Assembly: GCA_051294905.1 (NCBI GenBank) | Contig: CM119376.1 | Location: 25,172,001 to 25,236,000, forward strand | From: Botryllus schlosseri | Lineage: Eukaryota | Length of the DNA stretch: 64,000 nucleotides | Direction: 5' to 3' | Part shown: positions 1 through 47,165 of the stretch, piece by piece | How positions within the stretch are numbered: position 1 is the first letter of the stretch | How the letters are laid out: every line of letters starts with the position of its first letter | Made by a program: the position numbers and the translations under genes | The notes under the pieces: model-generated | What the model was told of the DNA's origin: nothing | The model's input: only the letters and a program-made list of their open reading frames with translations | Databases searched by the model: none

Positions 1-91
1 GGCGCGAAATTCATGAATCAAGTGTCTGGTATTTTGATGTTTCTGATTTTGATATTCTGGCAAGCAGAACCGAACTACTGGATATTCTTAC

Positions 92-28200: not shown

Positions 28201-31200
28201 TCTTTTGGCAAAAATTGGTGTGACGAAATATAATGATATAGATCCAGTAAAATAATTTCCAACTCTATATCTACAGTATAATCAACTCAAATATTATTTC
28301 AATCACATAAAGAGAGTCCATAGACCGACTGCCATTTCAGCCCCCATAATTGCCTACTTATTGATGCAATTTTCTCTGAGAAGGTATACAGAAGTTTCAA
28401 TTTCTATTTGCTGAAATGTGTTATACACTGCAAAAGTAATTCAAGCCACTATTTTATTAAAATTTGTTTGTTTAAGTTTAGATTCATTTCAAATATGAGT
28501 ACGTACCCTCGGTCTCTGAACACATTGGAAATAGCCATCTTCCCTCTGCTTACAGGAGTCCCTATTTCTAGCGCAGCCCCCAGGAGTATCGCCACACTGA
28601 AGCTCTCCGAGTCCAAGGCAAGTGCACGTTTGAGTACAGTCGGTAATCGCAAAAGTAAATCCTAAATCAAAGAGAGTTCTTGAAAACATTTAAAAAACTA
28701 TGAAGATATGACCATTACCTTTTTCAATATATCTTCCGTTTACGTTACAACCGCAGTCTCCACTTGCAACGCATTTATTTCCAGACAGCACAAAGCCTTC
28801 ATTGCACACACATCCTGAAAAGTCATAGTTTCACATTTAAAGTCAAGTCAGACATTTAGCAATATGGTATCAAAGATGTCACTTCCATTACATGCTCGTT
28901 AATCCCACCTGATTTCACATACACCTAGGACAAAATAACATATACGTCATCGAAAAATAACTAAAAATAATCAAAGACGAAAATATTGTGGTGAAAATAT
29001 GATAATTATCTGCCAAAGGTGATTAATGTCCCGAGATTGTCTAGCTCAATCATTTTGTGTTTTCACCACCAAACGCAGACAATTTTACTTCAATAGGATG
29101 GTTGTGAAATTTATTGTTTTCAAAGCATTACAATTTGTGTATAAACAAACCGACTTGCGGCGAAGATTAGTTATTCAACATAAAAATATGTGGCACAATT
29201 TATTTTGATATTTGCAATCGTAGTAATGAGATATATAGGCAACGTATTCAAACAGAATATACCTTCAACACAGGCTTCCCCCAGTCGATTCGGACTTCTT
29301 TCCAGGCAAGTGGCAGCTGTAGGATCGTTGCACGTGGGCTGGCATTGTTGTATACACGGGCTGTAAATCCCATTGGTGCATTCCACTGTAAGTGGAGCAA
29401 TATTATTGAGAAATTAGAACAAATTGCAAACTACAAATTGGAGCATCATAACATAAACAAATGACATACCAACCAGTAATAATAATTATGCTAATATGTG
29501 TTGATGTTATAGTGAAATCGGAAACCAGGACCTGACTTCACCACAATCTTCCAATCAACTAAATCTAATCAAACCAATCTTATTGCGACTGAAATTTAGT
29601 AAATGTTGAACAAAAAAATCATCCTATAATAATGATAACAAAATCTTCTTCGTGAAAAGTAAGAGTGACGTACTTTGCATTTCCTCATCCCTCCACATCT
29701 GAACAATCCCGCCCGCAAGGCAGTCATCGGCGTAAGACGAGAAAATACGTTCCTTCATGTCTTTGTCACCACCCGATGCGCAAAGATCGTAAACGCACGC
29801 GTTGTAAACTGTGATGGGGTCTTCGTATTCGTGGCACGCTTGGAACCGGCCATTAGGGTCGGTCAAAGCTTGGCAATCCGATTGATACTGAGCCAACTCT
29901 GTGTTGTCAGCGCAAACAGGTTCCATTTTTTCCTCTTCCGGAAGGTCTTGGCACCTGAATAACACAAAGACAAAATATAAAGATACCGTTATTGATTGAG
30001 ACTGAATATTATGTCAGACATTCTTGTAAAGAATGTACATAACATTCGGTAATAGATTGGGAATGATCACAGCATCATTGAAGGTTATTTCTGTTCTGTT
30101 CACATCTGCAGTACAAGTAAATATTTACATCTACAATCTGACTGTATGACAATACCAGAGAGCTAATAGATAATGAGTATATCAACAGAAGCACATAGAA
30201 TGTCAGACTTATAAGCCATTTTCCATGTTAGAAACGAGAATAAGGTTCACTAATTTGGCCTTCACATACTGTTGCATTTAAAATATTGAGTTAAAAGACA
30301 CATATTGCTTCCAAAAAATAAACAATTATGGTAGACACAACACAAATTGAAGAGATTCGTGGTAGTAAGATTCAAGTACAATGCTTCACAGAGATTGGAA
30401 TTTCTTGTAGCTTCATGCAAGTAACAAAGTCCAATACCGCGCCTTACCCTTCTGTTCCGTATCCATCCACTCTCCAGCTTTCAGCAAAAGACACTGCATT
30501 CATTTCACCGCCACTGGATCTCACCGTCATATCGTTATCTGGATTGTCATCCCAATCCCCGCACAATCCCTCTATCGTATTCCTCAAATTCGACCACACA
30601 GTGATTCTCAACCTGGCAATATGTATTGCATTATACAATTATATCATTGGCTCATTTTTGTGCAGTGTGTGGATAGTAGATTAACTCACAAGTCATAACC
30701 GTCCCATCTGACTACAAGACCAAAGTCGAAGTCAGCGACGAGGTATCTTCCGATGACTCGAATATCAACGCCATAAATTGAACTTCCAGGAATAACCTCT
30801 TTATCGTCGAGCTAGGGAATAATTTGAAATAACAATTTAACACAAGCAGAGGAGCGCACAAGAAAATACGAAAGAGGAACTATTTATGACACGAGCAAAA
30901 CAAGGATTAAGACAAGGAATCAGATGTATCTTTGAGTTTCTCATGAAAAACTGAAACTAACACAGAAAACGAATAAGACATAAGCATAAGCAATTGCCAA
31001 AATGAACGCAATCAGTCAAAATTCTTGTTAAATCCAGTACTATTTCTCAATGATACCGGTATGCAAAAAGTCGCTTAACATAGAAAGCAAAAACTAAGCA
31101 CAAAATAGAACTAGAGTGCCACAAAGTGATACATGATTGCGATAAATGCAGTCGGTAGGAAAAAATATATGGCTCACGATACATACCATGGCCTTTTGAC

Positions 31201-34200
31201 CCTGCTTCAAAACGAGAGTGTGTTGTTCACCGAATTCAATGTGAACCTCTTTGACGTGTGATGCACTCTTGTTCTCTGCAAGTGCTTCATTCACAGCCAC
31301 CACGGTAAATGAAGTTTCCTTCACTGCCATACGCTTTGACCTGCCAGGGATGAAGCTATTGTTAGCAATATTGCTGAAAATAATGAAAAAATCAGTTCAG
31401 TTTATTATTAAAATTTTGTCACTTCAAAACAAAAAATCAATCTTAAGACAAAATCCAACCGACCGTCAAAATTCTACCATTTATGTAATACAGCTACCAG
31501 TATAAAAATGACGGATGTGACAATACTTGAACTTTTCCACATCCAGTTAGCCTGCAACAGATTAGTATTTTATCATGTTACATTTACCTGACCATGATGT
31601 ACGCACAAGTGCCCATTGCGTCAAATTTCGTGCCATCGAAGGTTTCATAATGTGGGTCTGTGATGGCTTTACACGTCGCACTCTTCTGCAAATGAATTCA
31701 ACAACGGTTATCATGAAACGTGTGTGTGTAGTCATATAGAGAGGCATAATTGATTGCAGGTTGATCATCACCAAATATAGGATAGCCACATAAAATACCA
31801 TACTATAGATAGAGAAAGAACATATAAACAATGTTCCCTCTATAAGCTGCACAGTGCACACGTGAGCAATTGCGCAGTGCTGACACGCAATGTTCCCTCT
31901 AATTTTTGCCGAGTCTGCGTACACTCACCAACCGAGCGAGATAGTGTAATGGTTATGCGTCCGGCTTCTCGAGCGGTAGGTCGTGGGTTCGATCCCAGGC
32001 CGGTCATACCAAAGACTCGAAAATTGGTATCCGCAGCTATCCTGCTAGGCGCTCAGCAATCACGGATAGCATGGAGGAGAAAAAAACGGGGGCGCAGACT
32101 AGATGACCTCATGGGGCCGTATCGCAACTCCGTCGTCAAAGCATCTCGATGGTGCAGGCGAAAAAGAATATCATATCTCTCTCTCTCTCACTGCTCAAAC
32201 CCTTGGACAACAGGGCGTAACGACTAAAAAAAAACATCACTTCGGATTATTTTGATCGCAACTTGGATTTTCTGTGCGCAAGGATCATATCAGCGCTGCG
32301 CATTTGCGCATGTGCGCAGCTTAGAGGGAACATTGCTGACACGGTATCTGCGCACAGGGAATCTAAGCTGCACACAAAAAATCCGAAGTGAAAAAAATCC
32401 TTTTTTTTATTAGTCGTCATGCACTGTTGTCCAAGGGACAGCGCAGTGAGTTGGTGATTGCGCATCAAAATAGTGGGAAAATTGCATACGAATATAACCC
32501 TGCATCAAAATATTAAAGGGGCACTGCACTCTAAAAATGATGTGGCCTTAAATTGAAGGACAAAACGAAAAAAAAATTGGCCGCAGCCGTTTTCTTCAGA
32601 ATGCCACTATAATGAAGCTGCAATATATTGAAATTTCCACAAGAACTTCACGCTCCAGCATTCAGAGATTGAACTTTATATAGTTGTCAGCCGATGTTAT
32701 GAAGGAAATATGTCGTACACGACAGAAATAGATTACACTAGGCCCGATTTCGAAATGAATCTCCTGACTGAACATCTTACGTTGACCGCGGTTTCTAAAC
32801 CAACTTGGCGTGTACGACATATTTCCTTCATAACATCGGCTGACAACTATATAAAGTTCGATCTCTGCGTGACTGCTGAAACGTGAAGTTCTTGTGGAAA
32901 TTTCAATAAATTGCAGCTCCATTACGGTACGATGGCGTTCTGAAGAAAACGGCTGCAGCCAAAAATTTTTTTACGTCTTGCCCTTCAATTTGAGACCACA
33001 TTATTTTTAGACTGCAGTGCCCCTTTAACTCATACATTCCAAATCTCATATACCAGTTCCAGCAGAATATAGTAGTTCAGCTAAAATCAAATTCAGTACT
33101 AACACATACCAAAGTGGCATACCGGTACTGGTACTTAATTTCCTCTTATCTGTCACCGACAGTCAGAAATAGATCGGAATCAATCAGCAATTAAACATGA
33201 AGCATTACCTTCTGTCGCCCAATACATTGATGAAATCCATCAGGGCCTTGTGCACAGTATTCCATCCCACTGCATCCACCTACATCCTGGCAGCCTTCTC
33301 CACAAACACACTCCTTAGTACAGTTTTCATTCCTATATGAAAATCCTTTCAAATGGAAAAATATGTAAGCTTACTTTTTATAAAAATCCGATGTAGAAAT
33401 AGTTCTTGTCCACAGTTATGTGACAAATACCAAACTATACGACACTTTAAAATGAAGCATTAGGGCACGAAATACATATTTTCGACTTCATTTAAATATA
33501 CCAAAATTATGCAGAAAAATGCAAGGACACAGGTGTCACAACGCGCAAGTAATAGATCCTCTCGTCATCATCATTTTTATTATCATTCTCATCAATTTTA
33601 GATACTATAAGAACAGGAAATAAATACAGTGAAATAATTCAAAGTCAAGCAATCAAACTCCCACCGTGGCCAATAAATAGGCTATAGTACCAAAATGTAA
33701 GAATATGTTAAAATATAGTTATGTACAGTTGGCAATGTCAATGGGTACGCTGGGATTTAGATCCTGGAGATATCAGATTGGTTTCGAATCGAATGTAGGA
33801 TAAAATAAAGTATCAATATAGACGATAGATTCACTGCGCATTGTGCATGGCTAGTGGCTACCTATATAAAGTGCTTTCGTTTTTTCCCACGTTTTTGCGA
33901 CCAAAATTAGCCAGAAAGATAAATATATTGTATGACAAACTATACACAAGGAAAGAGGATCTATGAACTCCATGAAATTCATCCAAACTATCCCAAGTCA
34001 TCGCTGGTATCTCTCCTCAATGCTTAGCCTATTTTCATACAGGGATATCTATATGTCGATCCTTGTTTTCACACCATAATGTTTACAAGCTAAAATTAGA
34101 TTATTCATTGTGGATTGATCTATTAGGGAACAGGACTTTAGATTAGAAAAATACATATATATGACCATTGAGTTACTCAGATCATACCGACTACAGAGAG

Positions 34201-37200
34201 GCATACTTTCAAATCGCATACTTTCCACGTATCTTAATTGTGCACAACGAAGCATCATAATCGGAAATATGATTTACACATACGGCATTTGGATGATTAA
34301 AGTATTATCGCTTGTGAATGATGTAGTTCGCGTGATATCAATGAGATAATCATGTAGATTACATATGAGGTGAAACTGTGAAAACACCGGAATGATGTTA
34401 TCAGAAATATATATTTGCTGACCATCAACGCAACTGTATCGTAAGTTTGTACCTTGAGAATTTCATGGATTCATGTTACAAAGTTCTACGACAACGCAGG
34501 TGACATCACAATTTTCAATGCAGTTACACAAATGACATATTGTTTCAAATTTATGTCGACATGACTAATGTAAAATTACCAGGTATGGAAGACAAAAATT
34601 CATGAAATGTTCAATATAACCGATGTGAAACTATACTAGAGTGACAAAATTGCTCAAAAATTCATATCCCCTATCCGTGTTTGAGTAACTGGAAACCCAA
34701 AATATTCCATTTCAAGGCCATTGATGGAATGAGAAGTTCTGTCGAAACCATTCAGATGGTTATCGCGACACTTGGGTAATCGTTTGAATCAAATATCTCA
34801 AAAGTATCATATAAGTGCATAATACAGGCATCCATACCTTTTGGATAATAGCTTTCGTTGATAATGCACCCACACTCCGATTCAGGAACACAGACACTTC
34901 CTGACAGGATAAACCCTTCATCACACATACAACCTGAAAAAATTTATTAATTAAGGTATGTTCAAGATGAAATTGTCCTTATTTCTATACCTTCAATACA
35001 GCTTTGGGATGCAATTCGACTGATTTTGGAATCGGCACAAGTTGCCGGTACAGTGGTCGCACAGTGTTCGTAATGAGAGAAAGGTGGACATTCCATAGCT
35101 GGTAAAATCAGGTATGCGGTGAGTCATTCATCAGAAAAGTGGTAAAATTGCATATATGCGATACCTATTCTTGTTTCTCTCCTCCAGTTGCAAACAGAAA
35201 CATCCCCTCTCTGGCACGTGTCAGCGTAAGCACTAATTAAAATGTCAAGTGCCGTGAAATCATTCGGAGACTTGCACATCACTTTCTTGCAGTTCTGTGA
35301 TGTAGATAAATGCAGTCGTTGATTGAAATGTACCAAAATTTGAACAGCTGCGGGCTGGCAGAGTTGGGAATTTTTGCTTGAAAAAATACAGTGCCTGCAA
35401 TGTTTTTCTGCAGTTTATTTCAGATTTGTGTAAAAGGAAGTGTTATACTACCTTAGCATTGCCATACAATGCCTCAATATTTGGTTATAGAATCCTAATT
35501 GATGTCTGATGACATGAATTTCCGCACTGTGGTTGGACGGAAACCACAATGTGCCCAATAACAACAGATTTCGTTACACGAAATTGTTTTTCTATATCTT
35601 GGCGAGTACGGGGTCATATTTTCAATTGCACAAACAGTACAAAAATCATACTTACTTCATAAAAGTTTTTGGGATCAACAACATCGTGACATTCTGTGAA
35701 GCAGCCTCCTTTCGTTTTAGTCAATATACCACATTTGCTTTCTGCTTTCATCAATGAATCGCTATCACAAGGCAGTTCATCTTTAAACTTATTCAAGCTT
35801 GTTGAGCACCTGTAATATGAGAATTATTTCAGAGCCTTGCTTGCAACTGCTTGAGTTGTTATTATGGGGGATCACAACTCTGATCAACAGTAACATACTC
35901 CCAAAATTTGACATTGATATAACACAGGAAATAATGCAAACAAAATGCAGAGTATATACTATATAGGTATATCAGGCCATTCTGAAATCACATCTACTTT
36001 CTCATATAATGATGATCATGCAGCAAAAATTCTGTACATTTCTCAGAAATGAGATGAGTGAAACCTCAATAATTTCTCATTGGTGTAATCTCACTAATCA
36101 AGAAATTGGTGATTCTAATATTCCAAATCCTCAATTTCGCTGTTGTGGTACAAGATGTTTACGTAAGTGCAACATGTAATTTTGGATTAGACCTTGATAA
36201 TGATGTGATGTTGATGATTTATGATGCCCACGGATGTTCATGTCCTTGTCAACAGAACATAACCGATTTTAATTTCCTTCGGATTATTCAAATTTTCAAG
36301 AGGAAGGAAGTGATGACCGAAATTCTTCAAATCAAGTTGCCCAATGATGCTAGCATCGCAGATTCAACACAGTGAAGTAGGCCTACTAAGACACTATGTT
36401 GGAAAATTTGGTTCCCGACTGGTGCGTAGCGTATCCATTCCTGGAATATACTTGTTTGTCACCCAATTTAGAAATTCTGCAATAATTTCTCTTTATCTAC
36501 TGTTCCCCTATAATGCTTAGATTTTGTTTAAGATGGCTTACACCGATTATGCTAGCAGGTAAGACAATCTGTTTGTGAATTACCCGGCATGTTTGCTTGA
36601 AAATTATCCACATTCCAGAACAAATTACATTTCTGTGACTTCCTCAAGCAATATAATTGTTCTCGTGTACAGTAAAAGCAGTGTTCACACCATATAGGGG
36701 AGATGTGGTACCGATGGATCACTGGGACCGAAAATACTTTGAAAATTCTCTATGATAATTCCATGATTACACTCCGTGAACTTGTCTACAATTGCATGCT
36801 GGCAACATCTTTCCCCACATACAAAAAAATTCGACGTGCGCGAACTATGGGGTCTCTCACAGATGTTTTTTGTTTTGGGGAGTGTAAACTAAATTTATAT
36901 CGACATATACATTTTTCTCTGTAACCTTCAACACGAACAAACCAGCATTCATTTTTATTGTGAAGTCTAGGGCTTGTATCAGGCTATATAATGGAACCTA
37001 CTATTTTTTTTAGTACTTTCCTTGAGTGGAATTTTTTTGATTCATGTACAAAATTAGTAGGGTGGGGACCGATGATACAATAGCCAAATCAAGCAAAATA
37101 ATCAAGCATACTAATCATGAAACAAATGAAACATGACTACGTACAGAAAATCTTTATGTAATGATTGCATATGATGTTTTATCGCTATAACGAGGTCTTT

Positions 37201-40200
37201 GGAAGTCACACTGACGATTTTCGGGCAATATGTATGTACCCTCAAATTTATAAGTCCGAGCCTAAATCGAAACGTGATTTTATGAAACATTTGAGTCAAT
37301 ATTTAATCTATATTTTGACGGTTGCGACCGAAAATTCTTCTTTGGCTTGCTGTAGCTTAGATTATAATACTGAGCAAGAAAAGTTGTGACATCTGAGTAT
37401 TTTAGGGTATATGTGTCATAGGTCCCTGGGTCGTGTGCCATTGGACCCACCGGGTTGGGACCGATGACACGTTCGAGCAACAAATTTGAAACGTCCATAA
37501 ATATTCTTTGAAAAGACGGATATTCACGTATATGTGCGCGATAGGTAGAGCTTGTATCAAAGTGCTGAGCCAGCAAAAGATCTGCTGTTTTCGGCTGAAC
37601 ATTTTGGGGCCAGCGATCATTTTCCAATTTTTGATCCATCGGTACCACATCTCCCCTATCCGGTTCTAAAGTCATGAAGTATACAGCTACATTTAGATTG
37701 TGAAATTCATGAAATTTCTAAATCCACATTGGGCGAAGTAGGTCGAGTTGTGTAATACGGCGATGCAAATGAATTAACTGCTTGATCTACATATTATTTC
37801 TATCATCGTGGAGTGTTAATAGAACGGATTCACTCACTTGAGCTTTTCTGCATCTACAATATAGCTATTTGTAAAGTCAACTTCATCAAACGCAAGGGCA
37901 GGCTGGTTCCGTAACATAAAATCATCGTCTGCTTCTCCGTTGTAATTTCCACAAAGTCCTAAAATGACAGGTTAGGACAGGTGACTTTCGTTTGCTACAA
38001 AAAATGCAACAATCAGGTATCTGTCTGCACGGATGTCAATAGGCAAATGAATTGTAATGAGGTGATTAAATGTACTCTGATTGTGTGCGCAATTCAACTA
38101 ACTGCCCTTTATTTCCTTTACAGTCGCATTATCTGTGAGATTATTCGAGTGGCCTGATAAGATAACTTTGATTATCACTAATTTATTGCTCTTTCTTCAC
38201 TTATGTAGATCAATATTGGTATTGATAATTGGCAAAACGAGTTGATAGGCGGGTGATAAATATTATTATCCGTAATTTGAAATTCTGGAGAATCCATCAC
38301 AAAATTGATTGGAAGATTTGTGTGCAATACGTTACATCAACGATCGTAATTAAATATAGTTACGAGCATGGCAAGGGATATACCATCGCAAGAAAAACCT
38401 GGATATTCAAGACTCAACGACAACATTCATCCGACATTTATTATACTCACCATTTACACTTCCCTTGTAGCTATTGGGCAATTGCACAGAAAGGGCTGCG
38501 TCATCCACAAAGATTTTAATTCCGAAGGAAAGCGTGATGGACAGTCCTTTCCCACTTTTTTCAACTCTTAAACCATCTTTAACTCTGATGGGCAGATTTG
38601 CTTGCACCTCATTTACCTGAGAATTCAAAAATAATCATTAGGCCTACCTCCTCAAAGATTTGATTAATGGTATGCAGGTCATCTAATCTTGCTTAAACCA
38701 GATAAACTGCAATAATACTGCTTTATACAAGATTTTCTTACGTATATGTGATTAATTCCTCCTGCATTTTTTATCGTTACTTTGTTTCCAAGAGCTTCGG
38801 CTTCAATTACAGATATTTTGACGTTGTTGGGCCTCGACAAGGTTTCTTCGTTTGAAAACTGAAAATAGAGTTGAAGGCGATGACATTGAAAATGAACAGT
38901 ACTATGTTACATATTTGCTAGCATATACTAAGCAATCCGCTCAGAATTCCATTCCATGTGTAGGCTACTACAGTTCAATGATTAAGGATATTATGACTCT
39001 AACGGAGGATTGCGAGAAGCTAGCACTGATGAGTAATACGTGAAATAGGACACATTGTACTACTAAAGCCACAACCGCCTTTTCGAACTTTCGGAAATGC
39101 ATCCATTAAAGGACACGTATATCAATATAATAACATGTTGGAAGAGTGATTATGCATATTACACTCGATCAGTGCTCAAGAATTCATCATAACAGGGTCT
39201 TAAAAATGCAATAGTGACTTCATTTCGTGATTTAATCATCTCTTATCAAAATATCTCTTCATCTATACCAGTGGTTCTCAACCTGGGGGGCGTGAAAGCA
39301 TCTGAAGGGGGGCTCGAAGAAGCGGTCAACTGATAAAAAAATTCGTGCTCTGCGCGATTTACCTCCAATTCACGCGTGTTTCTCTATATATAGACCGAAT
39401 TTCATATTTTTCAATTCTTTCATCAACACTCAACAGTCATAACCTTCCATGCCATCAAAAAAATCTGTTGCGGTTGCTGGCATCCCGGTTGGATTTTGTG
39501 ATATGACGATAAGGGGGCGCGAAATTTTTCACTATTATAAAGGGGGGCGTGTCTGAAAAAAGGTTGAGAACCACTGATCTATACTGTATGTATATACAGC
39601 AGTCTACTCACACATAGTATATAATACCATACACATTTTTGCAACTCACCGTCACGTTGAACGGTACAAGGCCAACAGCATGAGCGGACGTGGTCCCCAC
39701 GAGAAGATACTTGCACCTCCCATAGAAGTCAAACCTCGATTTATCGAATGTGATGAAATGTGAACCACTCACGACGGTACAAAAGTCGGTGGCTGTTACG
39801 AAAGAAGTATCAAGTTGAATTACGCGTGAACCATACCACATCACTCCGCCGGACTATTGCAGTAGGCTAGTTTAGTCGTACGCGGTTCCACACTGTATTT
39901 TGTGAATAGAGAGCGAAATCTGCAGTCAGCAGGTCGTCTCGAAACAACCAAACAACTTGACTGTTTATGTGACTGGTAAATTTATGCTTTCATCGTAACG
40001 CAATCCATTTGTCTTATTGAGTATTTTCTTTCGCTCAAATGACGACCTCCTGCATTTCAAGTACGGCATCCCAGGGATTGTCATACAAGCTTCTATTGCG
40101 ATGATATGAAATGGGCAGATATGAGAACCGAATCCAAATAAAACTCATGTAGTTTATTTCATACTATTTGCGTTGAACGTTAAGACATGCCGTGCTCTCG

Positions 40201-43200
40201 CACTACACATCATGTATTTCGAATTCATAAATCATTTAAGCACAAATCTCCCTACCTTTTGGCACTTCCACGGTTATGCACACTTGGTCGGATAGTACGC
40301 TGAAAGTAACGAGCATGTAATAATTGTCAGATTTTGTGAAAACTTCGCAAAGGACTCACTCATCGGAACTTCTCGCCGCGACGCAAATCAGGTTGGATCC
40401 ATCCTGATCTAAAGTTGGTGTCCAGTTAATCTCTGTTGTGTAAACGCCGTCGTTTTCGACGATGGGCGATTTTCTGACACCGATAGGCGCGATCAAAACA
40501 TATTCTTCGATGCTGGAATGTGAAACTCCAAGTCATGAAGATGTCATTCCCGTATTACCGCAGACCTTTATATAATCTCGCGAACGACAACATATCTATA
40601 GTCTCGAACAAAACGAGCAGGACCAGTAAAGTCGTAATTCGTAAATACCACATACGATAAGAAGATGTCAACTATTGCAACAACAGTAGAGTGATGAACT
40701 CTTGACCAGCGTGAAAGGTTACTTTTCAGGCGCGTGGAGTATACTCGAAAACAATCAATTTGCTATAAGTGGAAAGACGTTTTCATCCCTCAAGAGGGCT
40801 ATTTCTGAATGCAAATGTTGTTGCTGCAAAACTGATCATCTGCGGCGTCAATCACAAACCTACATTAAGTATATCTCACATTTTACTGGCCATCGTCACG
40901 AACCGGAAATCGTTATCAATTCAATTTCGATAATAATAGATTGGTATACTGGATTCAAATTAACAATTATCGCACAATTAAAGCGGACCTTCAAGGTTGC
41001 CTTCTCGCTTATTTGAGTCCGACAATTACCTTCAAGGTGCCTACCTGCTTGTGATATTACAGGGCGAACTTGCCACCGTAAATGTAAAGTTCTTGTCCAC
41101 TCGAACCGTGACGGGATTGTTCGGGGAAATAGAGGCTTCAATTACCGGCTTGTCCGCACAGTTAGCTGGTGGAACTTTAACTAAAATGCACAATTATTTC
41201 GAATGATAATAATTATTTACAATGTTGCAATCGATATTCTATCGTGAAAAATCATGCATTGACAACTTTAGACAAAATAATATTGCACCTCATTTTCCCA
41301 TAGCATAAATACCACCGATGCATTGACTCGTGTGGCAAGGAATGTTCTGCTTCACTCACGTATAACTAGAAACTGGATTGGGACGGCGCTCAAAGGATCC
41401 CTCGTGGCGAATGACTTCTTCCCCATTGTGATGACCGATTTCGGAAAATCTTCCACCATCAACGCTACCGGTACTTTTCCAGTCGTGTTGGACACCGGGT
41501 TGTAATGCAGCAAACAGTTCTCCTAGAAACGATCAGAAAGGTGTTTTGAGTAGAAATATTTGTCTGTAATTCAGCGGAATATTACTGCTGCAAAATGGCG
41601 ATAAATGTTTTTCATAATTTCTACATTTCTGCCTTAATCCTAACCGGGTGCTTATATATTTATAAATTGTTATAACATGATATTTTACGACGCCGTATGT
41701 AGCACAATGGCAGGGTCAAGCGAGTAATTGGTTTTCATGCATCAACATACTTCGCGTGGTTTACTTGGAGAGGTGTCTAAAATTCGCTACTATATTTAGC
41801 GACGTTTAAAATCTTGTAAAGGATTTAGATGTGCCGGGATAATTACACGGACAGGGTCTGGCAACCGGATATGATAACCTGGTAATCACGTCTCGGCAAT
41901 AGGAAAAACGAAGACATATCGCATGCTGCAGAAGTATATTTACCGTATCTAACGTGAATTCCGAAAATAGATTGCATATTGTCCCGCATTCTCCTTCATG
42001 CTTTCCAAGTCTGCATGTTATCCTGTCGCCATCGATATCCCTCACTGCCAGATCTATTACGTCGGGCACTCCCGACCGTAAACTGAAAGACAATATCAAT
42101 TGATCCTGTATTCATGAGCGATGTCCTTTCTGACTAATTGATATCACAACATATATTTATCTTAGGGTTACCATACGTCGTCGTTTAAGAGGATTTGTCC
42201 TCTTTTTCGACTTTTTTGAAAGTGTCCTCGGAGGACGCCCAAATGTCCTCTTTTTTGAGAAATTGTCAGGGTGCATGGTAAAATTCGACTGACATACAGT
42301 AAATCATCACTGAAGTGACGCTCCGGCGGCTATTTGGGGAGCCGGGCCGGAAAGTCGGCCTCTTTTTTAGTGAACCAACGGATAATGTGAAAGAAGAACC
42401 GTAATTCGGGAGTTGCGCCGGAAAGTTGACCTTTTTTGTTTTAGTCAACCGACCACGAAGTGGAAAAAAAAAATTCAGGATTTTCCGGTATTGCAAGTCT
42501 GAAAATTTTGAAAAAGTGTCCTCTCTTCAAATTCCCAACATATGGTAACCCTAATTTATCTGGAATTGATGGTTGTGTGATTTGCTGTCGATGAGGTTAG
42601 ACCCAATGAATATAGTAAGGTTTATTTTTGCTTTCTGTTGTGCTTTCATTGGTCCGAAATCGCACTAAGTTTCCAAACATAAACGGAATCTCGTATTGAT
42701 AATACCACTATAAACTTTTCCATATTGCTGCAATTTGAAATAATCATGGCAGAAATAAAATGATTATCAGCTTTATGTCGACAATAGTCGCCCGACTGAA
42801 TATTTCGCATTCAAGCTAAGTAAGTGCTATTGTTAGTTAGTTTTAGGTATCCCAAGTATTCACATGATGAGATTTTGTAATTGCGTTGAATTTGATCGAC
42901 TATGCGTTTGCGAACTTTGTACATCATGCGCTCAGACCTGGCACAGAGATTCTGTACTGCGTTTAGTAATTTCAGCGTGTGGAGTGTGGACATTCGCCTT
43001 AATCTTCGTATTTTGTCGCGACACTAAATGTAGGTTTGATTGCATTCCGATCCGTTGATATGCCATTCATCGAGAGCAATCACAAGTTTAATGAGACGAT
43101 TCCTTTGTCACGTTTCCCGAAATTGCCGCAATGTCATATTTTGACAGCGAAAACAACGGCGCATTGTTCCCGCCGTGATTAACACGCGCGATCATTCATT

Positions 43201-46200
43201 CAGCACTTCTGCTTACTGTCATGACGGTTTGTCGCGATTGACATTTCATTTTTCATAATCACTGGAAGTTCTGGATCGATTTCAAATCGAACGAACCTGT
43301 ATCCTCTCTGGCGACAAGATATATTCATACGTCACAGTGCCATAAATTAGTCGATAATTACGTTCTCCGCTAACTGGTAAATTAGTTAATCGTGCTCTTG
43401 AAGTATCGCAGTGCGAACTTGATAATCAAATACGGCTTGTTCTCTGAGAACTGTGTCCGACCAAACTGTGAATTTACCTACACTACACAGTCCGCAACTT
43501 CCGTCATGCACGGAATTATGTGGAAATGAAAACATGTGATTTCAAAGAGATCCGTTGTCCCGGCTATCACGTTTTTGGCCGAGTGGACGGATGCAACAGT
43601 GATGGATTATTGTTTCCGCCGTGTTTTCGGAATGCTTCAATTACTTACGTTATCATGGGCGCCATTGCCGTCACCGGCGACGAGTTTGGACGGCCGATAT
43701 CTGACCGAATGCCAAGGTTCACAGTTGTCGTCAAGGCCCATTCTCCTCCAGCCCCCACCACCAAATCGGTAAGCCAACAGCATTCCATGTACCTGGAATG
43801 ATACGCGGCATCGTACGATTTGATCTGTAAAATCGCAGCGAAACTTACGATATTTCGATCGGACCGTCGTCTTGGAATACGTATTTGAAAGTATTGCTGC
43901 CGTACATCCAATCATTACCCGAGCTGTATTCGGTACACTTTTCTCCTAGAAAATAGAGCTTATTTAGAGCTTTGGGAGATATAGTCTAGTCTTGACACCT
44001 TAAACTTTCAGTGTCTGCTTACAATTAATTGGGACGATGCCATACTATATATCATTTTTGTGTCATATTTCAGCGTCAATACCTATCAATTTAGGTCGCG
44101 GCTGTACGGAAACGTGTTATAGTAGCGCTCCTAACCAAGGATCGATGTTTCGCATACATCAAGACTAGCCTAAGGTCTAATATTATAACAACTCTGGATG
44201 CGAAAGTACAACGTACGCTGCCAGGTGTAAATTGTTTTGGATGATTTCCTGTATATTCTGAAGCATGGTTGGACGTGATACAGGCGTTTGATTGATGGAA
44301 TGTTTATATCGTCAAACCAGAGTTCATTCTCGTGATTTGGAAATGAAATACTACTTCTCCGTGAATGCCGCTGATAACCAAAAGTTTGATTACAATTGCA
44401 ATTCAATGTAACACTTGAAAAGGATCATTTTTGATGAGACCATGCTTCGCGCACCGTCCAAACTATCGGAATATATATTTAACATATAAAATATACATTC
44501 CATATTCGGTATTTTGTCAAGAATGATTCTGAATTTACGATACTAGTTTCACGAGGCCGCCCCTTACGGGGATTTGACTGATTATGACTGTTTGGATTTC
44601 AATATCAGTCTATCAGATTACTTTTGTATACAACAAGCCTTCCTAACTAATACTCTGCATACTTAGCATTAATTAACATGAAAATCTTTTCAAGGTGACA
44701 AATTCCAGATTGCGTGCCGCATATGCTACGCTAGTCGTAATTGCAGCTTGGATGTAACAGCCATCGAAATCAACACGCTATATTACTCACGTTGAAACAT
44801 TAATCGACATAGCCGACTGAAATGAATATATTGATAAATTAAAATGGGTGATAATTTTATTTGTCTCTGAAAGTACTCCTCGATTTTCATTGTACATATT
44901 TTTGACCGATTACCTTTCACCAATCAATGTACCGGCATGTAATTGATCGGGGAATCTCCTGTATATTAATCAATGGTTTCTTGCAGACTGTAGTTACTCG
45001 ATTTTTGATTGCTGGTTCCTGGGTTCTAGTCGCACTTGTGTTATCATCTTGAGCCATGAGATTTAATGTCGGATAACTCTGGAAAGGCGAAGTTATGGTG
45101 TGATACTCACGTGTTGAGGCTACCACGCCATCGCAGCCGTACATGCAAAACCACCTTGCGTCTTCCCCTACTAGCGTACCGAATGATATCGCTTTTTCGT
45201 CGCATGATATCCGCGATAACCTCCATCCGAGTTTAAAAGTAAATATAACCTGTAAAACAGCGATCGAAAACAGTCCTTATGACGTACGTACAATGGACAA
45301 TCTGGTACATCGTTTGTAATAAACGTACAGTGGTACATATATATTGCTGATAAGTATTTTCGGATATTTTACAGCCATTAAAGTGACAAACGACCTGTAA
45401 GGGACCTATCACTTTCTTAAATACACTCCAATTTCTTTATTTTTAATTCAAAGTAATGTAGCTGTTGGGTTCAGTCGTTTATATCAAAGATCATGAACCG
45501 AATATCAAGTTCAGTCCGGTAGTCGTATGATGAGGCCTTTGAGATCTATAACGAAATTACCTATTCGCTAACAATAGTTACAAGAAGGCCATCAATGGCA
45601 TTAATACATTTATACCGCATTCCGGACACTCTTACTATTAAAAAAGCTAGTAGAGTAATGTTATGGACAGTAAATGACTTTCAGCCGGCGGTATTAACCG
45701 ATGATTAAAGTCGACTAATCCTGGAATTACCAAATTTATTCATATTATCACTCTTGTGATTTTTCTAGAATGCTGGTCGTACGAGTTGCAGAGGATAACA
45801 AATTCGATCATTTTTTTCCTATGTCAATAGGTTGGGTTTGTTATTTGCAGGCTTTGTCACAAAACTCGGTGTTGTTGATTCGACCGACAACGACACTTCG
45901 CTGTAATAAATGTTCGATCTGACGTGATCGTGAAAATTATATGATTTTCTATTCTTCCGTGATGGATCGTTTGCGAGACAATAATTTAAGAGAACATGCT
46001 TTTGGGCGATCCGTAAGTTTCCAATATATACATCTTTTACTCCGGGATTCTTCGTGACAGAGTCATAGCGGTGAAATAGATGATACCACCATGTTGCGAC
46101 ATTGTATCGAGTATATTTACTTCGTTCATGAGAGATTAAATCTGAGTTCTGGTTCGAGATGGAACAATCGGACACCCATTATAACCGTTTCATAGTATTA

Positions 46201-47165
46201 TTCTACGACGATAATACTGCGTTTCGTGTCGCCCGTGCTTAGGTTAGCGATCCAATCTTCAAAGTCGGTTTCGATCCTACCAAAGAGTTGCGACGGTCGT
46301 GAAATAAATAGAGCATAATTTGACCACGTATAATACTATATTTATATACATCCGGAAATCGCAAATTGGATGGGTACGAGGAGAGTACATTTGTAGCAAT
46401 TACCAGACTTTACTGTTCTCCTGTTGCGATATTGCAAATGCAAATACATTACATATTTATAATACGCAATTGGATATCATGGGCAGGTCATTTAGTCCGT
46501 TTGGCATTCTTGAAGTTTTACCTGGTTTAATCAGCTAGTATTTTAAGTGTTTTAATATCGCGATTACAGATGTCCTTTTATAGATGCTTGTGCGTGGGTC
46601 TACATGCCTGATTGGAATCGCTGGCCTTTTTGTCTGATATATCAGGTGAGCAGCGATGATTTTCCAAGTTAAAGTAATTTGATAAAAAATAATTAAAAAA
46701 TAGAATATAGTGTGAGCACAGGACACTGATTCCACACAGGTCTACATGAAATATAAATATGTACGTACATTGACTTACTGATTGTGGGATAAACTTGAAC
46801 ACGAGCAATTGAACAAGATTCATCCATCCTATACCGGCAATTATGTTTATTGTAAAATCAAAACTTGATAGCGATTGCAGACCTACATTTCCGCTAATGC
46901 CGCTGCCAACAGGACAATGCATTTATTGATGAGCACGATCGCATTGTGATTCACTTATAACAGAAAATAAATGCATCGCGTCTAGTCTATCAGTTCATAC
47001 CTCTTTATAAGTTAATGAAAAACTGTCGCTTGGTTTCCAAGATATAGTTCCGCCCCGGAAATGCGTCGCTTGAACATTCCCTGATCCATCTCCAATCAGG
47101 CAGAGAATAATATATAAAAAAGTAACAAAAGGCAGGGCCTGATACGCGGCCTTCCTCGAATTCAT
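92..47165 (-). CDS. Giant secreted multi-exon FCGBP/zonadhesin-like protein (N-terminal HFRGG/Sib-like region + >=9 VWD-C8-TIL-E modules); 3' end lies beyond the left edge
   Basis: 76 exons assembled manually, all GT-AG with matching phases; summed length 11,030 nt leaves phase 2, as observed at the last donor (91). Repeated VWD (TFDG, G[LV]CG[DN]), C8 (DxC..Y..xC), TIL (CQPTC, GCxC..G[FY]V.SG..CV...CGC) motifs. Confidence 0.95.
505..800. mobile_element. Foldback/palindromic MITE family A copy
   Basis: Begins GGAGGTACAGAACTTCA, the reverse complement of the right ends at ~6395 and ~15270; internal arms mirror each other around TGACGTCA. Confidence 0.7.
1698..5474 (-). CDS. Module 8 (class A): VWD8-C8-TIL-E
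   Basis: Exons 5209-5474, 4349-4513, 3809-3978, 3154-3298, 2933-3090, 1911-2032, 1698-1846; VCQVWGSTHFKSFD, GGLCGNFNG. Confidence 0.9.
2130..2660. repeat. Degenerate dispersed repeat family C (related copy ~8280-8900)
   Basis: Shared motifs GCTCAATTCCAAC/GTTGGAATTGAGC and CACACCAAATTTG/CAAATTTGGTGTG in both loci; boundaries approximate. Confidence 0.5.
4219..4325. mobile_element. Truncated hAT-type MITE, same family as 42163-42553
   Basis: TAGGGTTACCATACGTC...GAGGATTTGTCCTCTTTTT...GAAAGTGTCCTC matches the left end of the 42163 element. Confidence 0.8.
6060..6400. mobile_element. Foldback/palindromic MITE family A copy
   Basis: >=130-bp imperfect inverted arms (...GAGAATTGGAAAGAACATTGTATATC...TGACGTCAC / GTGACGTCA...GATATACAATGTTCTTTCCAATTCTC) around a ~20-25-nt spacer; ends TGAAGTTCTGTACCTCC. 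Confidence 0.8.
6519..11029 (-). CDS. Module 7 (class B VWD/C8, different tail phases): VWD7-C8-TIL-E
   Basis: Exons 10932-11029, 10263-10410, 9642-9763, 9057-9221, 7829-8121, 7144-7266, 6719-6810, 6519-6660; VCKAITDPHYTTFDG, EGVCGDFND. Confidence 0.93.
9905..10134. mobile_element. Degenerate CAG-terminal element family B (fragments in many introns, e.g. ~810-882, 1450-1660, 7350-7760, 15500-15640, 18870-19070, from 22252, 23330-23486, 24570-25000, 25750-26240)
   Basis: Termini CAGAG[CT]TGGTCAGTA (22252) and ACTGACCA[AC]CTCTG (ending 10134, 23486); internal TACTTGAGTA/TACTCAAGTA motifs recur. Fragment boundaries approximate. Confidence 0.6.
11089..14854 (-). CDS. Module 6 (class B): VWD6-C8-TIL-E
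   Basis: Exons 14757-14854, 14544-14694, 14226-14347, 13840-14004, 12792-13057, 11976-12104, 11818-11913, 11089-11240; TCKVITDPHYTTFDG, EGLCGRYDD. Confidence 0.93.
13150..13720. repeat. Dispersed repeat family E (copies ~3560-3730, ~10560-10740, ~14065-14150); this copy is interrupted by a hAT MITE
   Basis: Shared GCCTCTTATTC.CA.GTT.TAG..CAAGG...AGTC.TTT[TC]GAC...TTTCAT motif string. Confidence 0.7.
13276..13626. mobile_element. hAT (Charlie-like) MITE
   Basis: TIRs CAGTGGTTCCCAAC / GTTGGGAACCACTG; 8-bp flanks TTATAGAC / TTCTAGGC (6/8). Confidence 0.9.
15015..15275. mobile_element. Foldback MITE family A copy (internally deleted)
   Basis: Clear similarity to 6080-6400, same right end CTGAAGTTCTGTACC. 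Confidence 0.75.
15323..18372 (-). CDS. Module 5 (class B): VWD5-C8-TIL-E
   Basis: Exons 18275-18372, 18053-18206, 17868-17989, 17175-17339, 16830-17089, 15880-16020, 15726-15821, 15323-15468; TCKAVTDPHYMTFDG, EGVCGDFND. The acceptor at 16020 is slightly less certain. Confidence 0.9.
16450..16550 (+). mobile_element. Probable Helentron-associated (DINE/HINE-like) element end or tandem junction
   Basis: 12-bp perfect inverted repeat TGGAGGTGACGA / TCGTCACCTCCA flanking AACAAGGCCTTTATTGGCC, followed by a (GTCT)n microsatellite; matches the subTIR + GTCY layout I recall for HINE/DINE-1. Confidence 0.45.
18492..23067 (-). CDS. Module 4 (class B): VWD4-C8-TIL-E
   Basis: Exons 22970-23067, 22013-22160, 21814-21935, 21315-21479, 20156-20454, 19285-19416, 18700-18795, 18492-18640; TCKAITDPHYTTFDG, EGLCGDFND. 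Confidence 0.93.
20487..21116. mobile_element. hAT-Charlie-like non-autonomous element
   Basis: Degenerate TIRs CAGTGGATCTCAAC / GCTGAGAACAAATG, subterminal GTACCACTAGTGGTAC palindrome, 8-bp TSD GACTAAAG / GACTAAGG (7/8). Confidence 0.8.
23130..28027 (-). CDS. Module 3 (class B): VWD3-C8-TIL-E
   Basis: Exons 27930-28027, 27623-27773, 26603-26724, 26379-26543, 25381-25664, 24048-24170, 23890-23988, 23130-23278; TCSAVTDPHYMTFD, EGVCGDFDD. Confidence 0.93.
24196..24556. mobile_element. hAT MITE with subterminal GACTCGAGTC palindrome arrays
   Basis: TIRs CAGGGTTGTAA / TTACAACCCTG; perfect 8-bp TSD TACATTAG at 24188-24195 and 24557-24564. Confidence 0.95.
28507..31685 (-). CDS. Module 2 (class B): VWD2-C8-TIL-E
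   Basis: Exons 31588-31685, 31187-31340, 30690-30811, 30448-30612, 29674-29954, 29263-29385, 28719-28814, 28507-28661; TCKAITDPHYETFDG, EGLCGDWDD. Confidence 0.93.
31888..32335. mobile_element. hAT MITE (inner), same family as its host element
   Basis: TIRs CAATGTTCCCTCTAA / TTAGAGGGAACATTG; perfect 8-bp TSD CTGACACG. Confidence 0.93.
31934..32234 (+). mobile_element. tRNA-derived SINE
   Basis: Pol III A box TAGTGTAATGG (31942-31952) and B box GGTTCGATCCC (31986-31996), a core CATACCAAAGACTCGAAAATTGGTATCCGCAGCTATCCTGCTAGGCGCTCAGCA resembling Meta-type SINE cores (from recall), and an A-rich tail at ~32226-32234. Confidence 0.8.
32517..33024. mobile_element. Kolobok-like foldback MITE with ~205-bp TIRs
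   Basis: TTAA|AGGGGCACTGCA ... TGCAGTGCCCCT|TTAA; arms 32517-32721 and 32809-33024, 87-nt spacer. AGG termini with a TTAA TSD fit Kolobok. Confidence 0.85.
33209..39792 (-). CDS. Module 1 (class A): VWD1-C8-TIL-E
   Basis: Exons 39650-39792, 38742-38858, 38451-38616, 37838-37958, 35656-35809, 35165-35294, 34991-35098, 34838-34933, 33209-33345; FCTVVSGSHFITFD, GLCGNYNG, GCMCDEGFILSG. Confidence 0.88.
36697..37656. mobile_element. Unclassified non-autonomous DNA transposon with TA flanks
   Basis: 25-bp TIR GGGGAGATGTGGTACCGATGGATCA / TGATCCATCGGTACCACATCTCCCC, TA on both sides; internal repeats of GGGACCGATGA. Confidence 0.8.
39269..39576. mobile_element. hAT (Charlie-like) MITE, 308 bp
   Basis: Perfect 16-bp TIR CAGTGGTTCTCAACCT / AGGTTGAGAACCACTG; perfect 8-bp TSD ATCTATAC. 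Confidence 0.96.
40256..45249 (-). CDS. N-terminal 'integrin beta-like'/Sib-like region, exons 2-9
   Basis: Exons 45111-45249, 43849-43945, 43649-43792, 41944-42082, 41360-41522, 41045-41180, 40360-40512, 40256-40299; translation VIFTFKLGWR...CMYGC...CTEYSSGNDW...WALTTTVNLGIRSDIGRPNSSPVTAMAP...DIDGDRITCR...ECGTIC...VALMVEDF...PLSAVPIQF...INWTP...LICVAA. The family assignment is recalled motif similarity, not a database hit. Confidence 0.8.
42163..42553. mobile_element. hAT MITE, 391 bp
   Basis: TIR TAGGGTTACCATA / TATGGTAACCCTA; perfect 8-bp TSD ATTTATCT. Confidence 0.95.
47001..47165 (-). CDS. First coding exon: signal peptide + start of mature N-terminal domain (MNSRKAAYQALPFVTFLYIILCLIGDGSGNVQA-THFRGGTISWKPSDSFSLTYKE)
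   Basis: ATG at 47165, hydrophobic stretch, VQA-like cleavage site, HFRGGTISW motif, phase-0 donor GAG|GTATGA at 47000 matching the phase-0 acceptor at 45249. Confidence 0.85.

What the first reader, a model, noticed from the sequence alone, without database searches (positions are those of the whole stretch)
40256..47165. Unusual fusion: HFRGG/Sib-like N-terminal region heading an FCGBP-type VWD polyprotein
Seen in sequence: nine in-frame exons encode a signal peptide and ~360 aa with HFRGGTISW, C..GC, NSSPV, DIDGD and VALMVEDF motifs, spliced (phase 1) directly onto VWD1 of a >=9-module VWD-C8-TIL-E array. Established: vertebrate FCGBP begins with an IgGFc-binding domain, zonadhesin with MAM/mucin regions and alpha-tectorin with NIDO. 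From recall, HFRGG-type N-termini occur in patchily distributed invertebrate 'integrin beta-like' proteins, Dictyostelium Sib adhesins and some bacterial surface proteins. Inference: exon shuffling placed an adhesion-type head on a mucus-scaffold body, giving a possibly undescribed class of secreted mucus, adhesive or microbe-trapping protein.
Basis: partly seen in the sequence, partly recalled or inferred. Interest (0 to 1): 0.8.

Follow-up and report, generated by a model that had tools for sequence, protein, structure and literature searches.

The report
Sib-type head on VWD mucus scaffold
This is one real, transcribed animal gene (other notes of this scan say a sea squirt) that puts a three-domain head, otherwise found on amoeba and mollusc adhesion proteins, at the front of a long chain of mucus-type cross-linking modules; I found this combination nowhere else, and its function is untested.

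Summary
Nine minus-strand exons (47165-40256) encode a signal peptide and a 393-residue head. RNA contigs from two runs join that head, in frame and at GT-AG sites, to the first VWD exon at 39792.

The head belongs to the family that holds Pfam SIBA-E_N. It is 35% identical over its whole length to bivalve "integrin beta-like protein A/C". It scores 315 bits against a family profile built without the window. Five of the six introns of the clam gene lie at the same position and phase.

A confident model of the clam relative shows three beta-sandwich domains. The same head opens Dictyostelium SibA, coral, echinoderm and fish ZP proteins, mollusc EGF proteins and Bacteroidota surface proteins.

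Downstream lie eight complete VWD-C8-TIL-TILa modules and the start of a ninth. The gene then runs off the window.

No search found this head on such an array. The nearest case is a mussel protein with head + NIDO + one VWD. Proteins over about 2,000 residues could only be searched with a single 53-residue exon, so absence is weakly shown.

Verdict: a real gene and a new domain combination of known parts. A binding role for the head is inferred, not shown. Interest is moderate.

The parts
47001..47165 (-). Exon 1: start codon, signal peptide (about aa 1-33) and the HFRGGTISWKP strand that opens head domain 1
   Evidence: ORF and donor GTATGA. Its join to exon 2 follows from an X2 contig loose end that maps to 47003-47032. 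It aligns to the N-termini of family members.
45111..45249 (-). Exon 2: head domain 1, with the W..C..GC motif
   Evidence: The joint 43944/45110 is present in X1, X2 and X3 contigs. Frame checked.
43849..43945 (-). Exon 3: head domain 1 (C-T-E-Y-S..DW..G)
   Evidence: Joints on both sides are in X1, X2 and X3. A 56-nt intron follows.
43649..43792 (-). Exon 4: end of domain 1 and the linker (RSDIGRPNSSPV)
   Evidence: Joints 43789/43846 and 42082/43649. The intron position and phase are shared with the clam gene.
41944..42082 (-). Exon 5: head domain 2 (cadherin-like) with the DIDGD..C motif
   Evidence: Joints. Alignment. The domain 2 fold comes from the P0009 model.
41360..41522 (-). Exon 6: head domain 2 (VALMVEDFP ... 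PIQFLV), the most conserved stretch
   Evidence: Joints. This exon was the query that recovered the family among 1.84 billion representative proteins.
41045..41180 (-). Exon 7: start of head domain 3 (Ig-like)
   Evidence: Joints 41180/41360 and 40512/41045.
40360..40512 (-). Exon 8: head domain 3 (WTP...G...IC.A motif)
   Evidence: Joint. The contigs differ from the window over the last 3 nt of the exon (40362-40360), which looks like a polymorphism. Donor GTGAGT.
40256..40299 (-). Exon 9: 44-nt microexon that gives the last strand of domain 3 and ends in phase 1
   Evidence: Joints 40299/40363 and 39792/40256 in X1 and X2.
39650..39792 (-). First exon of VWD domain 1, spliced in phase 1 to the head
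   Evidence: Pfam VWD at E 2.4e-07. The joint 39792/40256 skips 463 nt, with CT..AC ends on the + strand, in 3 contigs of 2 runs.
33194..38858 (-). Rest of D module 1: VWD exon 2 from 38858, VWD C-terminal part 37971-37837, C8 35823-35127, TIL 35123-34755, TILa 33370-33194
   Evidence: A transcript loose end maps to 38844-38858. Pfam C8, TIL and TILa hits. Iterated profile searches.
1680..31685 (-). D modules 2-8, each VWD-C8-TIL-TILa. VWD starts are at 31685, 28027, 23067, 18372, 14854, 11029 and 5474. Modules 2-7 carry TDPHY.TFD.
   Evidence: The TILa of module 7 (6714-6373) was seen by eye only.
1..1263 (-). Start of a ninth VWD domain. The gene runs off the window, so its C-terminus is unseen.

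Best explanation
This is one gene on the minus strand, spanning at least 47 kb, with its 3' end outside the window. It encodes a secreted giant glycoprotein.

Shown: a signal peptide is followed by a 360-residue head homologous to the N-terminal head of Sib / 'integrin beta-like' proteins. In a confident model of a clam relative, the head consists of an FN3/Ig-like domain (the Pfam SIBA-E_N part), a cadherin-like domain carrying a DxDGD motif, and an Ig-like domain. The head is spliced in phase 1 to at least nine FCGBP/zonadhesin-type D modules (VWD-C8-TIL-TILa).

Inferred: the gene arose by intron-mediated exon shuffling. This put an old, vertically inherited head cassette onto the module-boundary intron of a VWD array. 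The array probably works as in FCGBP and mucins, as a disulfide-rich scaffold that can be cross-linked into mucus or matrix. The distal head probably acts as a terminal binding module whose ligand is unknown. Candidates are particles, microbes, a glycan or a cell surface. Binding may depend on calcium.
For: - Gene structure and transcription: all joins, including 40256/39792, are present in RNA contigs of X1 and X2, and the upstream joins also in X3. Splice sites are GT-AG and the frame is continuous.
- Head identity: blastp to P0009 and P0050 ('integrin beta-like protein A/C') gives 35% identity over aa 10-391, E about 1e-64. Those relatives pass Pfam PF24907 at 31.8 and 28.4 bits against a cut-off of 28.1. 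The head scores 315 bits against a family HMM built without the window rows.
- Fold: the P0009 model has pLDDT 86.9 and pTM 0.84. It shows three beta-sandwich domains. AlphaFold DB matches at TM 0.74-0.84 cover the N-termini of SibA Q54KF7 (11-375), coral and fish ZP proteins, Mytilus and rotifer proteins, and bacterial T9SS proteins.
- Shuffling: five of six clam introns are identical in position and phase. The head-to-VWD1 intron sits 11 nt before the first Cys, and the inter-module introns sit 12 or 11 nt before it. The same head carries EGF arrays in bivalves, ZP in coral, echinoderms and fish, and NIDO-VWD in a mussel.
- Array.
- Scaffold role: by analogy with FCGBP (PMC8267560, PMC11796319) and with the ascidian gel-forming mucin Ci-GFM1, which adds chitin-binding domains to a VWD scaffold (PMC6109156).
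Against: - No functional data exist for this protein or for the head in any organism. In the SibA papers I read, the integrin analogy rests on the VWA domain and the NPXY tail, and the text I read assigns no role to the N-terminal head (PMC12686525).
- The fold matches are generic beta-sandwiches (Z no higher than 7.7), so binding is only a plausible role.
- Continuity of the transcript beyond the second VWD exon was not shown.
- Six modules have TDPH instead of GDPH. Asp, Pro and His are kept, but the Gly whose cis bond favours cleavage is lost (PMC10880436), so FCGBP-like autocleavage is uncertain.
- The C-terminus is unseen, so 'secreted' could turn out to be 'membrane-anchored'.
- The window's own head could not be given to Pfam or to structure prediction, because a spliced product has no reference. 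Fold statements therefore rest on a relative that is 35% identical.
Confidence: 0.55

Rival explanations
1. The gene is the same, but the head is not a ligand-binding module. It would be an assembly or capping device, for example one that dimerises or orients N-termini during packing and polymerisation. The D1-D2 propeptide of VWF and the mucins plays such a role.
For: The head recurs at the extreme N-terminus of proteins whose bodies polymerise or form matrices: ZP, EGF arrays, NIDO-VWD and VWD arrays. It appears in tandem copies in fish proteins. No specific ligand-binding fold was recognised.
Against: It also heads bacterial T9SS surface proteins and the amoeba adhesion receptor SibA, which are not known polymers. 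The cadherin-like DxDGD domain is typical of adhesion modules.
Confidence: 0.22
2. The protein is a membrane-anchored adhesion receptor. In that case a transmembrane segment would lie in the unseen 3' part, as in zonadhesin or in the bivalve and Dictyostelium head-bearing proteins. The VWD array would then be a stalk that holds the head away from the cell.
For: The head-bearing relatives P0039 and P0050 end with a transmembrane segment and a tail. SibA is a type I membrane protein (PMC12686525). The gene's 3' end is outside the window.
Against: There is no evidence in the window either way. FCGBP-type arrays of nine or more modules are secreted in the characterised cases (PMC8267560).
Confidence: 0.15
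3. Artefact: these are two neighbouring genes (a short head gene and an FCGBP-like gene) joined only by rare read-through or by chimeric assembly of contigs.
For: NCBI models the clam relative as a 368-aa stand-alone gene with the next gene 552 bp downstream. An X1 contig shows an unspliced stretch upstream of exon 2.
Against: The join uses a proper GT-AG intron, is in frame and is seen in three contigs of two runs. It has the same depth as the other joins of the same contig (18.8 in X1; 51 for the main X2 contig). No stop codon ends the head: exon 9 ends in phase 1. The clam 'stand-alone' model lacks the last strand of domain 3 and is itself collinear with the EGF exons that follow, so it looks mis-split.
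Confidence: 0.04

Closest known systems
FCGBP (IgGFc-binding protein) and zonadhesin-type VWD-C8-TIL(-TILa/E) polyproteins
   Same: It has a signal peptide, a distinct N-terminal head, and then a long tandem array of D assemblies. There are eight complete modules plus the start of a ninth here, against 13 in human FCGBP. There is no PTS mucin domain in the part seen. An Asp-Pro-His motif sits at the FCGBP cleavage position in six modules.
   Different: The head is a Sib-type three-domain module, not the FCGBP H domain, the zonadhesin MAM/mucin region or the tectorin NIDO. The motif is TDPH rather than GDPH. The C-terminus is unknown.
Dictyostelium SibA-E ('integrin beta-like proteins') and Pfam PF24907 SIBA-E_N
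   Same: The N-terminal head, about 365 residues directly after the signal peptide, has the same three-domain fold (TM 0.74 between the model of the clam relative and SibA 11-375). The family's opening H-[FY]-x-G-G strand is present.
   Different: No VWA domain or transmembrane segment was seen in the part of the gene that lies in the window, and the 3' end, where an NPXY tail would lie, is outside it. The body is a VWD array. It is therefore not an integrin-like receptor in the sense of SibA (PMC12686525).
Bivalve 'integrin beta-like protein A/C' (for example XP_060583837.1 Ruditapes, and the Mercenaria, Crassostrea and Mya proteins)
   Same: These are the closest sequence relatives of the head (32-35% identity over its full length). 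Five introns are shared in position and phase.
   Different: There the head is followed by EGF arrays, and a transmembrane segment and tail follow in P0039 and P0050. Here VWD modules follow it.
Sinanodonta woodiana hypothetical protein ACJMK2_041103 (P0106)
   Same: It is the only protein found that has both this head and a VWD domain.
   Different: Its body is a MUC4/SUSD2-like cassette (NIDO, one VWD, C8-3_MUC4) followed by EGF_CA repeats. It is not a repeated VWD-C8-TIL-TILa array.
Ci-GFM1, the gel-forming mucin of Ciona (PMC6109156)
   Same: It is an ascidian precedent for a VWD scaffold that carries added recognition modules (chitin-binding domains).
   Different: It has the VWF/MUC2-type D1-D2-D'D3-D4-VWC-CK layout with different added domains, and no Sib-type head is described.

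Membership tests
Sib-type N-terminal head (Pfam PF24907 SIBA-E_N and the two domains that follow) | Significant sequence match to the family | tested here: met
   The window's head scores 315 bits (E 4e-98, single-sequence search) against an HMM of 18 family rows that excludes the window. Blastp to P0009 and P0050 gives E about 1e-64 over aa 10-391. Those relatives pass the PF24907 gathering score. The Pfam model itself could not be run on the spliced head, and single exons gave nothing.
Sib-type N-terminal head (Pfam PF24907 SIBA-E_N and the two domains that follow) | Position directly after the signal peptide, opening with H-[FY]-x-G-G | tested here: met
   Exon 1 encodes a hydrophobic leader and then ..QATHFRGGTISWKP. 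The layout is the same in all aligned members.
Sib-type N-terminal head (Pfam PF24907 SIBA-E_N and the two domains that follow) | Three-beta-sandwich fold shared with SibA residues 11-375 | tested here: inconclusive
   This is met for the 35%-identical relative P0009 (pLDDT 86.9; TM 0.74 to Q54KF7). The window's own head could not be folded, because the spliced product has no reference.
Sib / integrin beta-like adhesion receptors (SibA-E) | Extracellular VWA domain, transmembrane segment and cytoplasmic NPXY talin-binding motifs | tested here: inconclusive
   None was seen in the 47 kb of the gene held in the window. The exon segments scanned gave only VWD, C8, TIL and TILa. The 3' end lies outside the window.
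FCGBP/zonadhesin-type D-assembly polyprotein | Tandem VWD-C8-TIL-TILa(E) assemblies | tested here: met
   Pfam hits to VWD, C8, TIL and TILa on exon segments. Nine VWD starts and eight collinear complete modules.
FCGBP/zonadhesin-type D-assembly polyprotein | GDPH autocatalytic cleavage motif in most VWD domains | tested here: inconclusive
   Six of the nine VWD starts have TDPH. The other three have SGSH, GSTH or GNGH. Asp and His are required for cleavage, and the cis Gly-Asp bond favours it (PMC10880436). Whether TDPH is cleaved is unknown.
FCGBP proper | FCGBP-specific N-terminal H domain | tested here: not met
   The N-terminus is the Sib-type head.
Gel-forming mucin / VWF | PTS mucin domain, VWC and C-terminal cystine knot | tested here: inconclusive
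   No PTS-rich reading frame lies on the minus strand of the window. The C-terminal part lies outside the window.

The most novel reading that the evidence does not exclude
The Sib-type three-domain head may be a general, ancient 'front end' for extracellular polymers and surface adhesins, spanning bacteria, amoebae and animals, that recognises a common class of ligand such as a microbial or particulate surface. In this filter-feeding animal its fusion to an FCGBP-type scaffold would then make a dedicated particle- or microbe-capturing component of secreted mucus, for example the pharyngeal feeding net or the gut barrier. That would be a mucus protein with a built-in adhesin, of a kind not described in vertebrates.
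Probability: 0.15. Interest if true: 0.65.

Novelty: new variant of a known kind. Interest (0 to 1): 0.42.

Why it matters
VWD-array proteins (FCGBP, zonadhesin, tectorins, mucins) differ mainly in what they carry at their ends, and those end modules decide what the scaffold binds. [quoted passage not shown] A relative whose head is a recognisable adhesin-type module gives a tractable handle: express the head, find its ligand and localise the transcript.

The work also shows that the poorly annotated Sib-type head is a conserved cassette of about 360 residues and three domains, of which Pfam covers only the first 119 positions. Its exon structure is conserved between bivalves and this animal. 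It has been attached to EGF, ZP, NIDO-VWD and VWD-array bodies. This is a clean example of exon shuffling in extracellular proteins.

If the gene proves to be expressed in the mucus-secreting zones of a filter feeder, it becomes a candidate component of the feeding net or gut barrier.

Tried and rejected
- Pfam on single head exons gave nothing useful. The domains are split over exons, and a spliced product cannot be referenced, so Pfam, AlphaFold and the atlas were run on the relative P0009 instead.
- I first predicted an extra exon between 43649 and 42082 and an exon 3 start at 43942. The RNA joints rejected both.
- The one exhaustive protein search was run with exon 6 alone, which is 53 aa. 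It found 20 hits. About half were unrelated proteins (LRR, ankyrin) or very short fragments, and the window's full-length product is not in that library.
- Word-based homologue searches with P0009, A1 and A2 are limited by protein length to about 2,000 aa or less. They could not see a 4,000-aa array protein, so 'no other head + VWD array' is only weakly supported.
- The atlas feature searches and the fold searches found no VWD-bearing cluster.
- PDB sequence and fold searches found no solved relative of the head. They returned only generic Ig, FN3 and cadherin sandwiches, plus EGF matches to the tails of alignment rows.
- Literature searches for HFRGG, for integrin beta-like protein + VWD and for IgGFc-binding protein + ascidian returned nothing relevant.
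- I considered a histidine-brace (N-terminal His) reading and dropped it. The conserved His is the second residue after the likely cleavage site and lies in the first beta-strand of the model.
Full report
**The sequence.** The finding lies on the minus strand. Stop-free segments and splice-site inspection gave a tentative exon chain. One read-laying run on 39400-45399 with three runs kept as transcript contigs and one raw-read run then fixed it.

- The contigs carry these joints: 45110/43944, 43846/43789, 43649/42082, 41943/41521, 41360/41180, 41045/40512, 40363/40299 and 40256/39792.
- All joints have CT..AC ends on the + strand, which is GT-AG for a minus-strand gene.
- The critical last joint, head to VWD, is in one contig of X1 and two of X2. 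In X1 and in the main X2 contig it has the same depth as the other joints.
- The upstream joints are also in X3, which comes from a different study.
- A 255-nt loose end of the X2 contig at 45251 maps to 47003-47032, which joins exon 1 to exon 2.
- A loose end beyond 39650 maps to 38844-38858, so the transcript continues in frame into a second VWD exon.

Splicing the nine exons gives a 393-residue head with no stop. It ends in phase 1 and reads straight into VWD. The RNA data removed an exon I had predicted between 43649 and 42082, and moved the start of exon 3 to 43945. One X1 contig runs on unspliced above 45251, which is either retained intron 1 or an alternative start.

**What the head is.** Single exons gave no Pfam hit apart from two chance-level matches below the curated cut-offs, except for the VWD exon.

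An exhaustive phmmer search with exon 6 against 1.84 billion representative proteins found few true relatives:

- a clam protein, P0009 (XP_060583837.1, 'integrin beta-like protein A', Ruditapes philippinarum);
- fish proteins with two or three tandem heads, one of them named 'ZP domain-containing' by UniProt (Pfam found no domain in it);
- two MetaClust proteins with two heads each.

P0009 passes Pfam PF24907, 'Integrin beta-like protein A-E, N-terminal', at 31.8 bits against a cut-off of 28.1. P0050 from Mercenaria does too.

The spliced head aligns to these bivalve proteins over aa 10-391 at 34-35% identity, with E about 1e-64. It scores 315 bits against a family HMM built without the window rows. 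Homology stops exactly where the head stops. EGF repeats follow in the bivalve proteins, and VWD follows here.

**Fold.** The window's product cannot be referenced, so I folded P0009 with alignment A1. The model is confident (pLDDT 86.9, pTM 0.84) and consists only of beta structure.

- VIA-align splits it into three sandwiches: residues 22-150 (FN3/Ig-like), 154-272 (cadherin EC-like) and 275-368 (Ig-like). All matches have Z of 7.7 or less, so they are generic (Foldseek against the PDB likewise).
- No solved structure of the family exists.
- In AlphaFold DB the whole three-domain head superposes at TM 0.74-0.84 on the N-termini of several proteins: a 1,236-aa ZP-domain protein, a fish ZP protein, proteins without informative names, and Dictyostelium SibA (Q54KF7, residues 11-375). 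It matches bacterial proteins more loosely (TM 0.58-0.67); one is named for PF24907 and another has a gliding-motility C-terminal domain.
- The ESM Atlas adds mollusc EGF proteins, echinoderm ZP proteins, rotifer proteins and Bacteroidota CHU_C or Por-tail proteins.

The conserved unit is about 360 residues long, three times the length of the Pfam model.

**Origin.** I reconstructed the exon structure of the clam gene exactly from its locus and mapped it through a global alignment.

- Five of the six clam introns fall at the identical residue and phase as introns of the window's gene. In window/clam numbering these are 55.0/39.0, 133.67/120.67, 181.67/168.67, 228.0/214.0 and 327.67/313.67.
- The clam model ends where the window has its eighth intron. 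It lacks the last strand of domain 3.
- It is followed 552 bp downstream, on the same strand, by a 2,013-aa EGF gene that is collinear with the bivalve head+EGF proteins. The clam 'stand-alone head' is therefore probably a split annotation.

Within the window, the introns that separate D modules lie 12 nt (phase 0) before the first Cys of VWD. In module 8, and at the head/VWD1 junction, the intron lies 11 nt before it in phase 1. The head was thus joined at a pre-existing module-boundary intron. These facts support intron-mediated exon shuffling of an old, vertically inherited head cassette.

**The body.** Iterated profile searches seeded with the window's own exons find collinear sets on the minus strand only:

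- nine VWD starts (about 39.8, 31.7, 28.0, 23.1, 18.4, 14.9, 11.0, 5.5 and 1.3 kb);
- eight VWD C-terminal parts and eight C8 domains (nine C8 segments, because module 1 is split);
- seven or eight TIL halves and seven TILa. An eighth TILa, at 6714-6373, is visible by eye.

Pfam confirms VWD, C8, TIL and TILa on ten sampled exon segments. The window therefore holds eight complete D assemblies and the start of a ninth, and the gene leaves the window.

Modules 2-7 carry TDPHY.TFD at the position of the GDPH autocleavage motif. Modules 1, 8 and 9 do not. In FCGBP the Asp and His are essential for cleavage and the cis Gly-Asp bond favours it (PMC10880436; PMC8267560). Cleavage here is possible but uncertain. 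No PTS-rich frame is present. No second head copy exists in the window.

**Is the architecture known?** I found no protein with this head on a VWD-C8-TIL array in any of these searches:

- the exhaustive exon-6 search, which has no length limit but low sensitivity;
- three word-based searches covering lengths up to about 2,000 aa;
- AlphaFold DB clusters and the ESM Atlas;
- the literature.

The nearest case is P0106 of the mussel Sinanodonta woodiana. It has the head, then NIDO, one VWD and C8-3_MUC4 (a MUC4-like cassette), then EGF_CA repeats.

The searches could not properly see proteins of 3,000-5,000 residues, and the window's own annotated product is not in the libraries. The claim of novelty is therefore provisional.

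**Organism.** Other agents' notes on this genome call it an ascidian. I did not test that. If it is true, the precedent of Ci-GFM1, a Ciona VWD-scaffold mucin carrying chitin-binding domains in the gut barrier, is relevant. So is the endostyle mucus net used for particle capture (PMC6109156).

**Mechanism.**

- Shown: there is a transcribed gene for signal peptide + Sib-type head + FCGBP-type array.
- Inferred: the array serves as a disulfide-rich, cross-linkable scaffold as in FCGBP (PMC8267560, PMC11796319).
- Inferred: the head, placed at the free N-terminal end, serves as a binding module, possibly calcium-dependent through its cadherin-like DxDGD domain.

The rivals are an assembly or capping role for the head, a membrane-anchored receptor whose transmembrane segment lies in the unseen 3' part, and, very unlikely, a read-through artefact. 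In the SibA papers I read, the integrin analogy rests on the VWA domain and the NPXY tail (PMC12686525), so the head's function is open in every lineage.

**Verdict.** The observation and the structural interpretation are correct. This is a new combination of two known kinds of module. It is interesting as a clean shuffling case and as a handle on both the uncharacterised Sib-type head and FCGBP-like scaffolds. It is not a categorically new system, and no function has been shown.

**Tool limits.** Spliced proteins cannot be handed to the family, atlas or structure tools.

Noticed in passing
window 42150-42550 and 39400-39600: Two intronic stretches have very high contig depth in all RNA runs (up to about 65,000 in X3) and many partly matching reads with unlike ends. 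They are probably copies of an abundant, transcribed short repeat (SINE-like or a transposon fragment) inside introns of this gene.
   Followed up: no
window 45251-45399 and beyond: One X1 transcript contig continues unspliced from exon 2 into intron 1 for at least 150 nt, and about 190 nt further beyond the stretch laid. This is either retained intron 1 or an alternative 5' end that would lack the signal-peptide exon.
   Followed up: partly
L001 10001-23364 (Ruditapes philippinarum JAKTTH010002866.1): The clam gene annotated as a 368-aa 'integrin beta-like protein A' lacks the last strand of its third domain. It is followed 552 bp later, on the same strand, by a 2,013-aa EGF gene collinear with Mercenaria head+EGF+TM proteins. 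The two models are probably one gene.
   Followed up: partly
P0106 (Sinanodonta woodiana ACJMK2_041103, partial): This mussel protein combines the Sib-type head with NIDO, one VWD, C8-3_MUC4 and EGF_CA repeats. It is another undescribed body for the same head.
   Followed up: partly
P0003, P0004, P0006 and about 40 teleost proteins: Teleost fish have a large family of uncharacterised proteins of about 425 aa made of this head. Some have two or three tandem heads, mucin-like tails or a ZP domain. Pfam recognises nothing in most of them, so vertebrates do carry the Sib-type head.
   Followed up: no
window 31685-9056 (VWD starts of modules 2-7): The motif is TDPH rather than GDPH, and it is conserved in six consecutive modules. 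The modules are also similar in their inter-module linker (LQRRATCKA). This suggests recent tandem duplication of a module with a variant cleavage motif.
   Followed up: partly
window 55767-56842 (+): Two adjacent ORFs of 106 and 212 aa lie on the plus strand upstream of the gene and look like remnants of a transposon protein. They were not examined.
   Followed up: no
window 39650-41521 exons versus RNA contigs: The transcript contigs of X1 and X2 differ from the window at several exonic sites (for example 39689, 39717, 39728, 39746, 41077, 41093, 41400, 41484), and over 40360-40362 they carry three letters the aligner could not place. Upstream exons are identical. This is allelic polymorphism within the species.
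   Followed up: no
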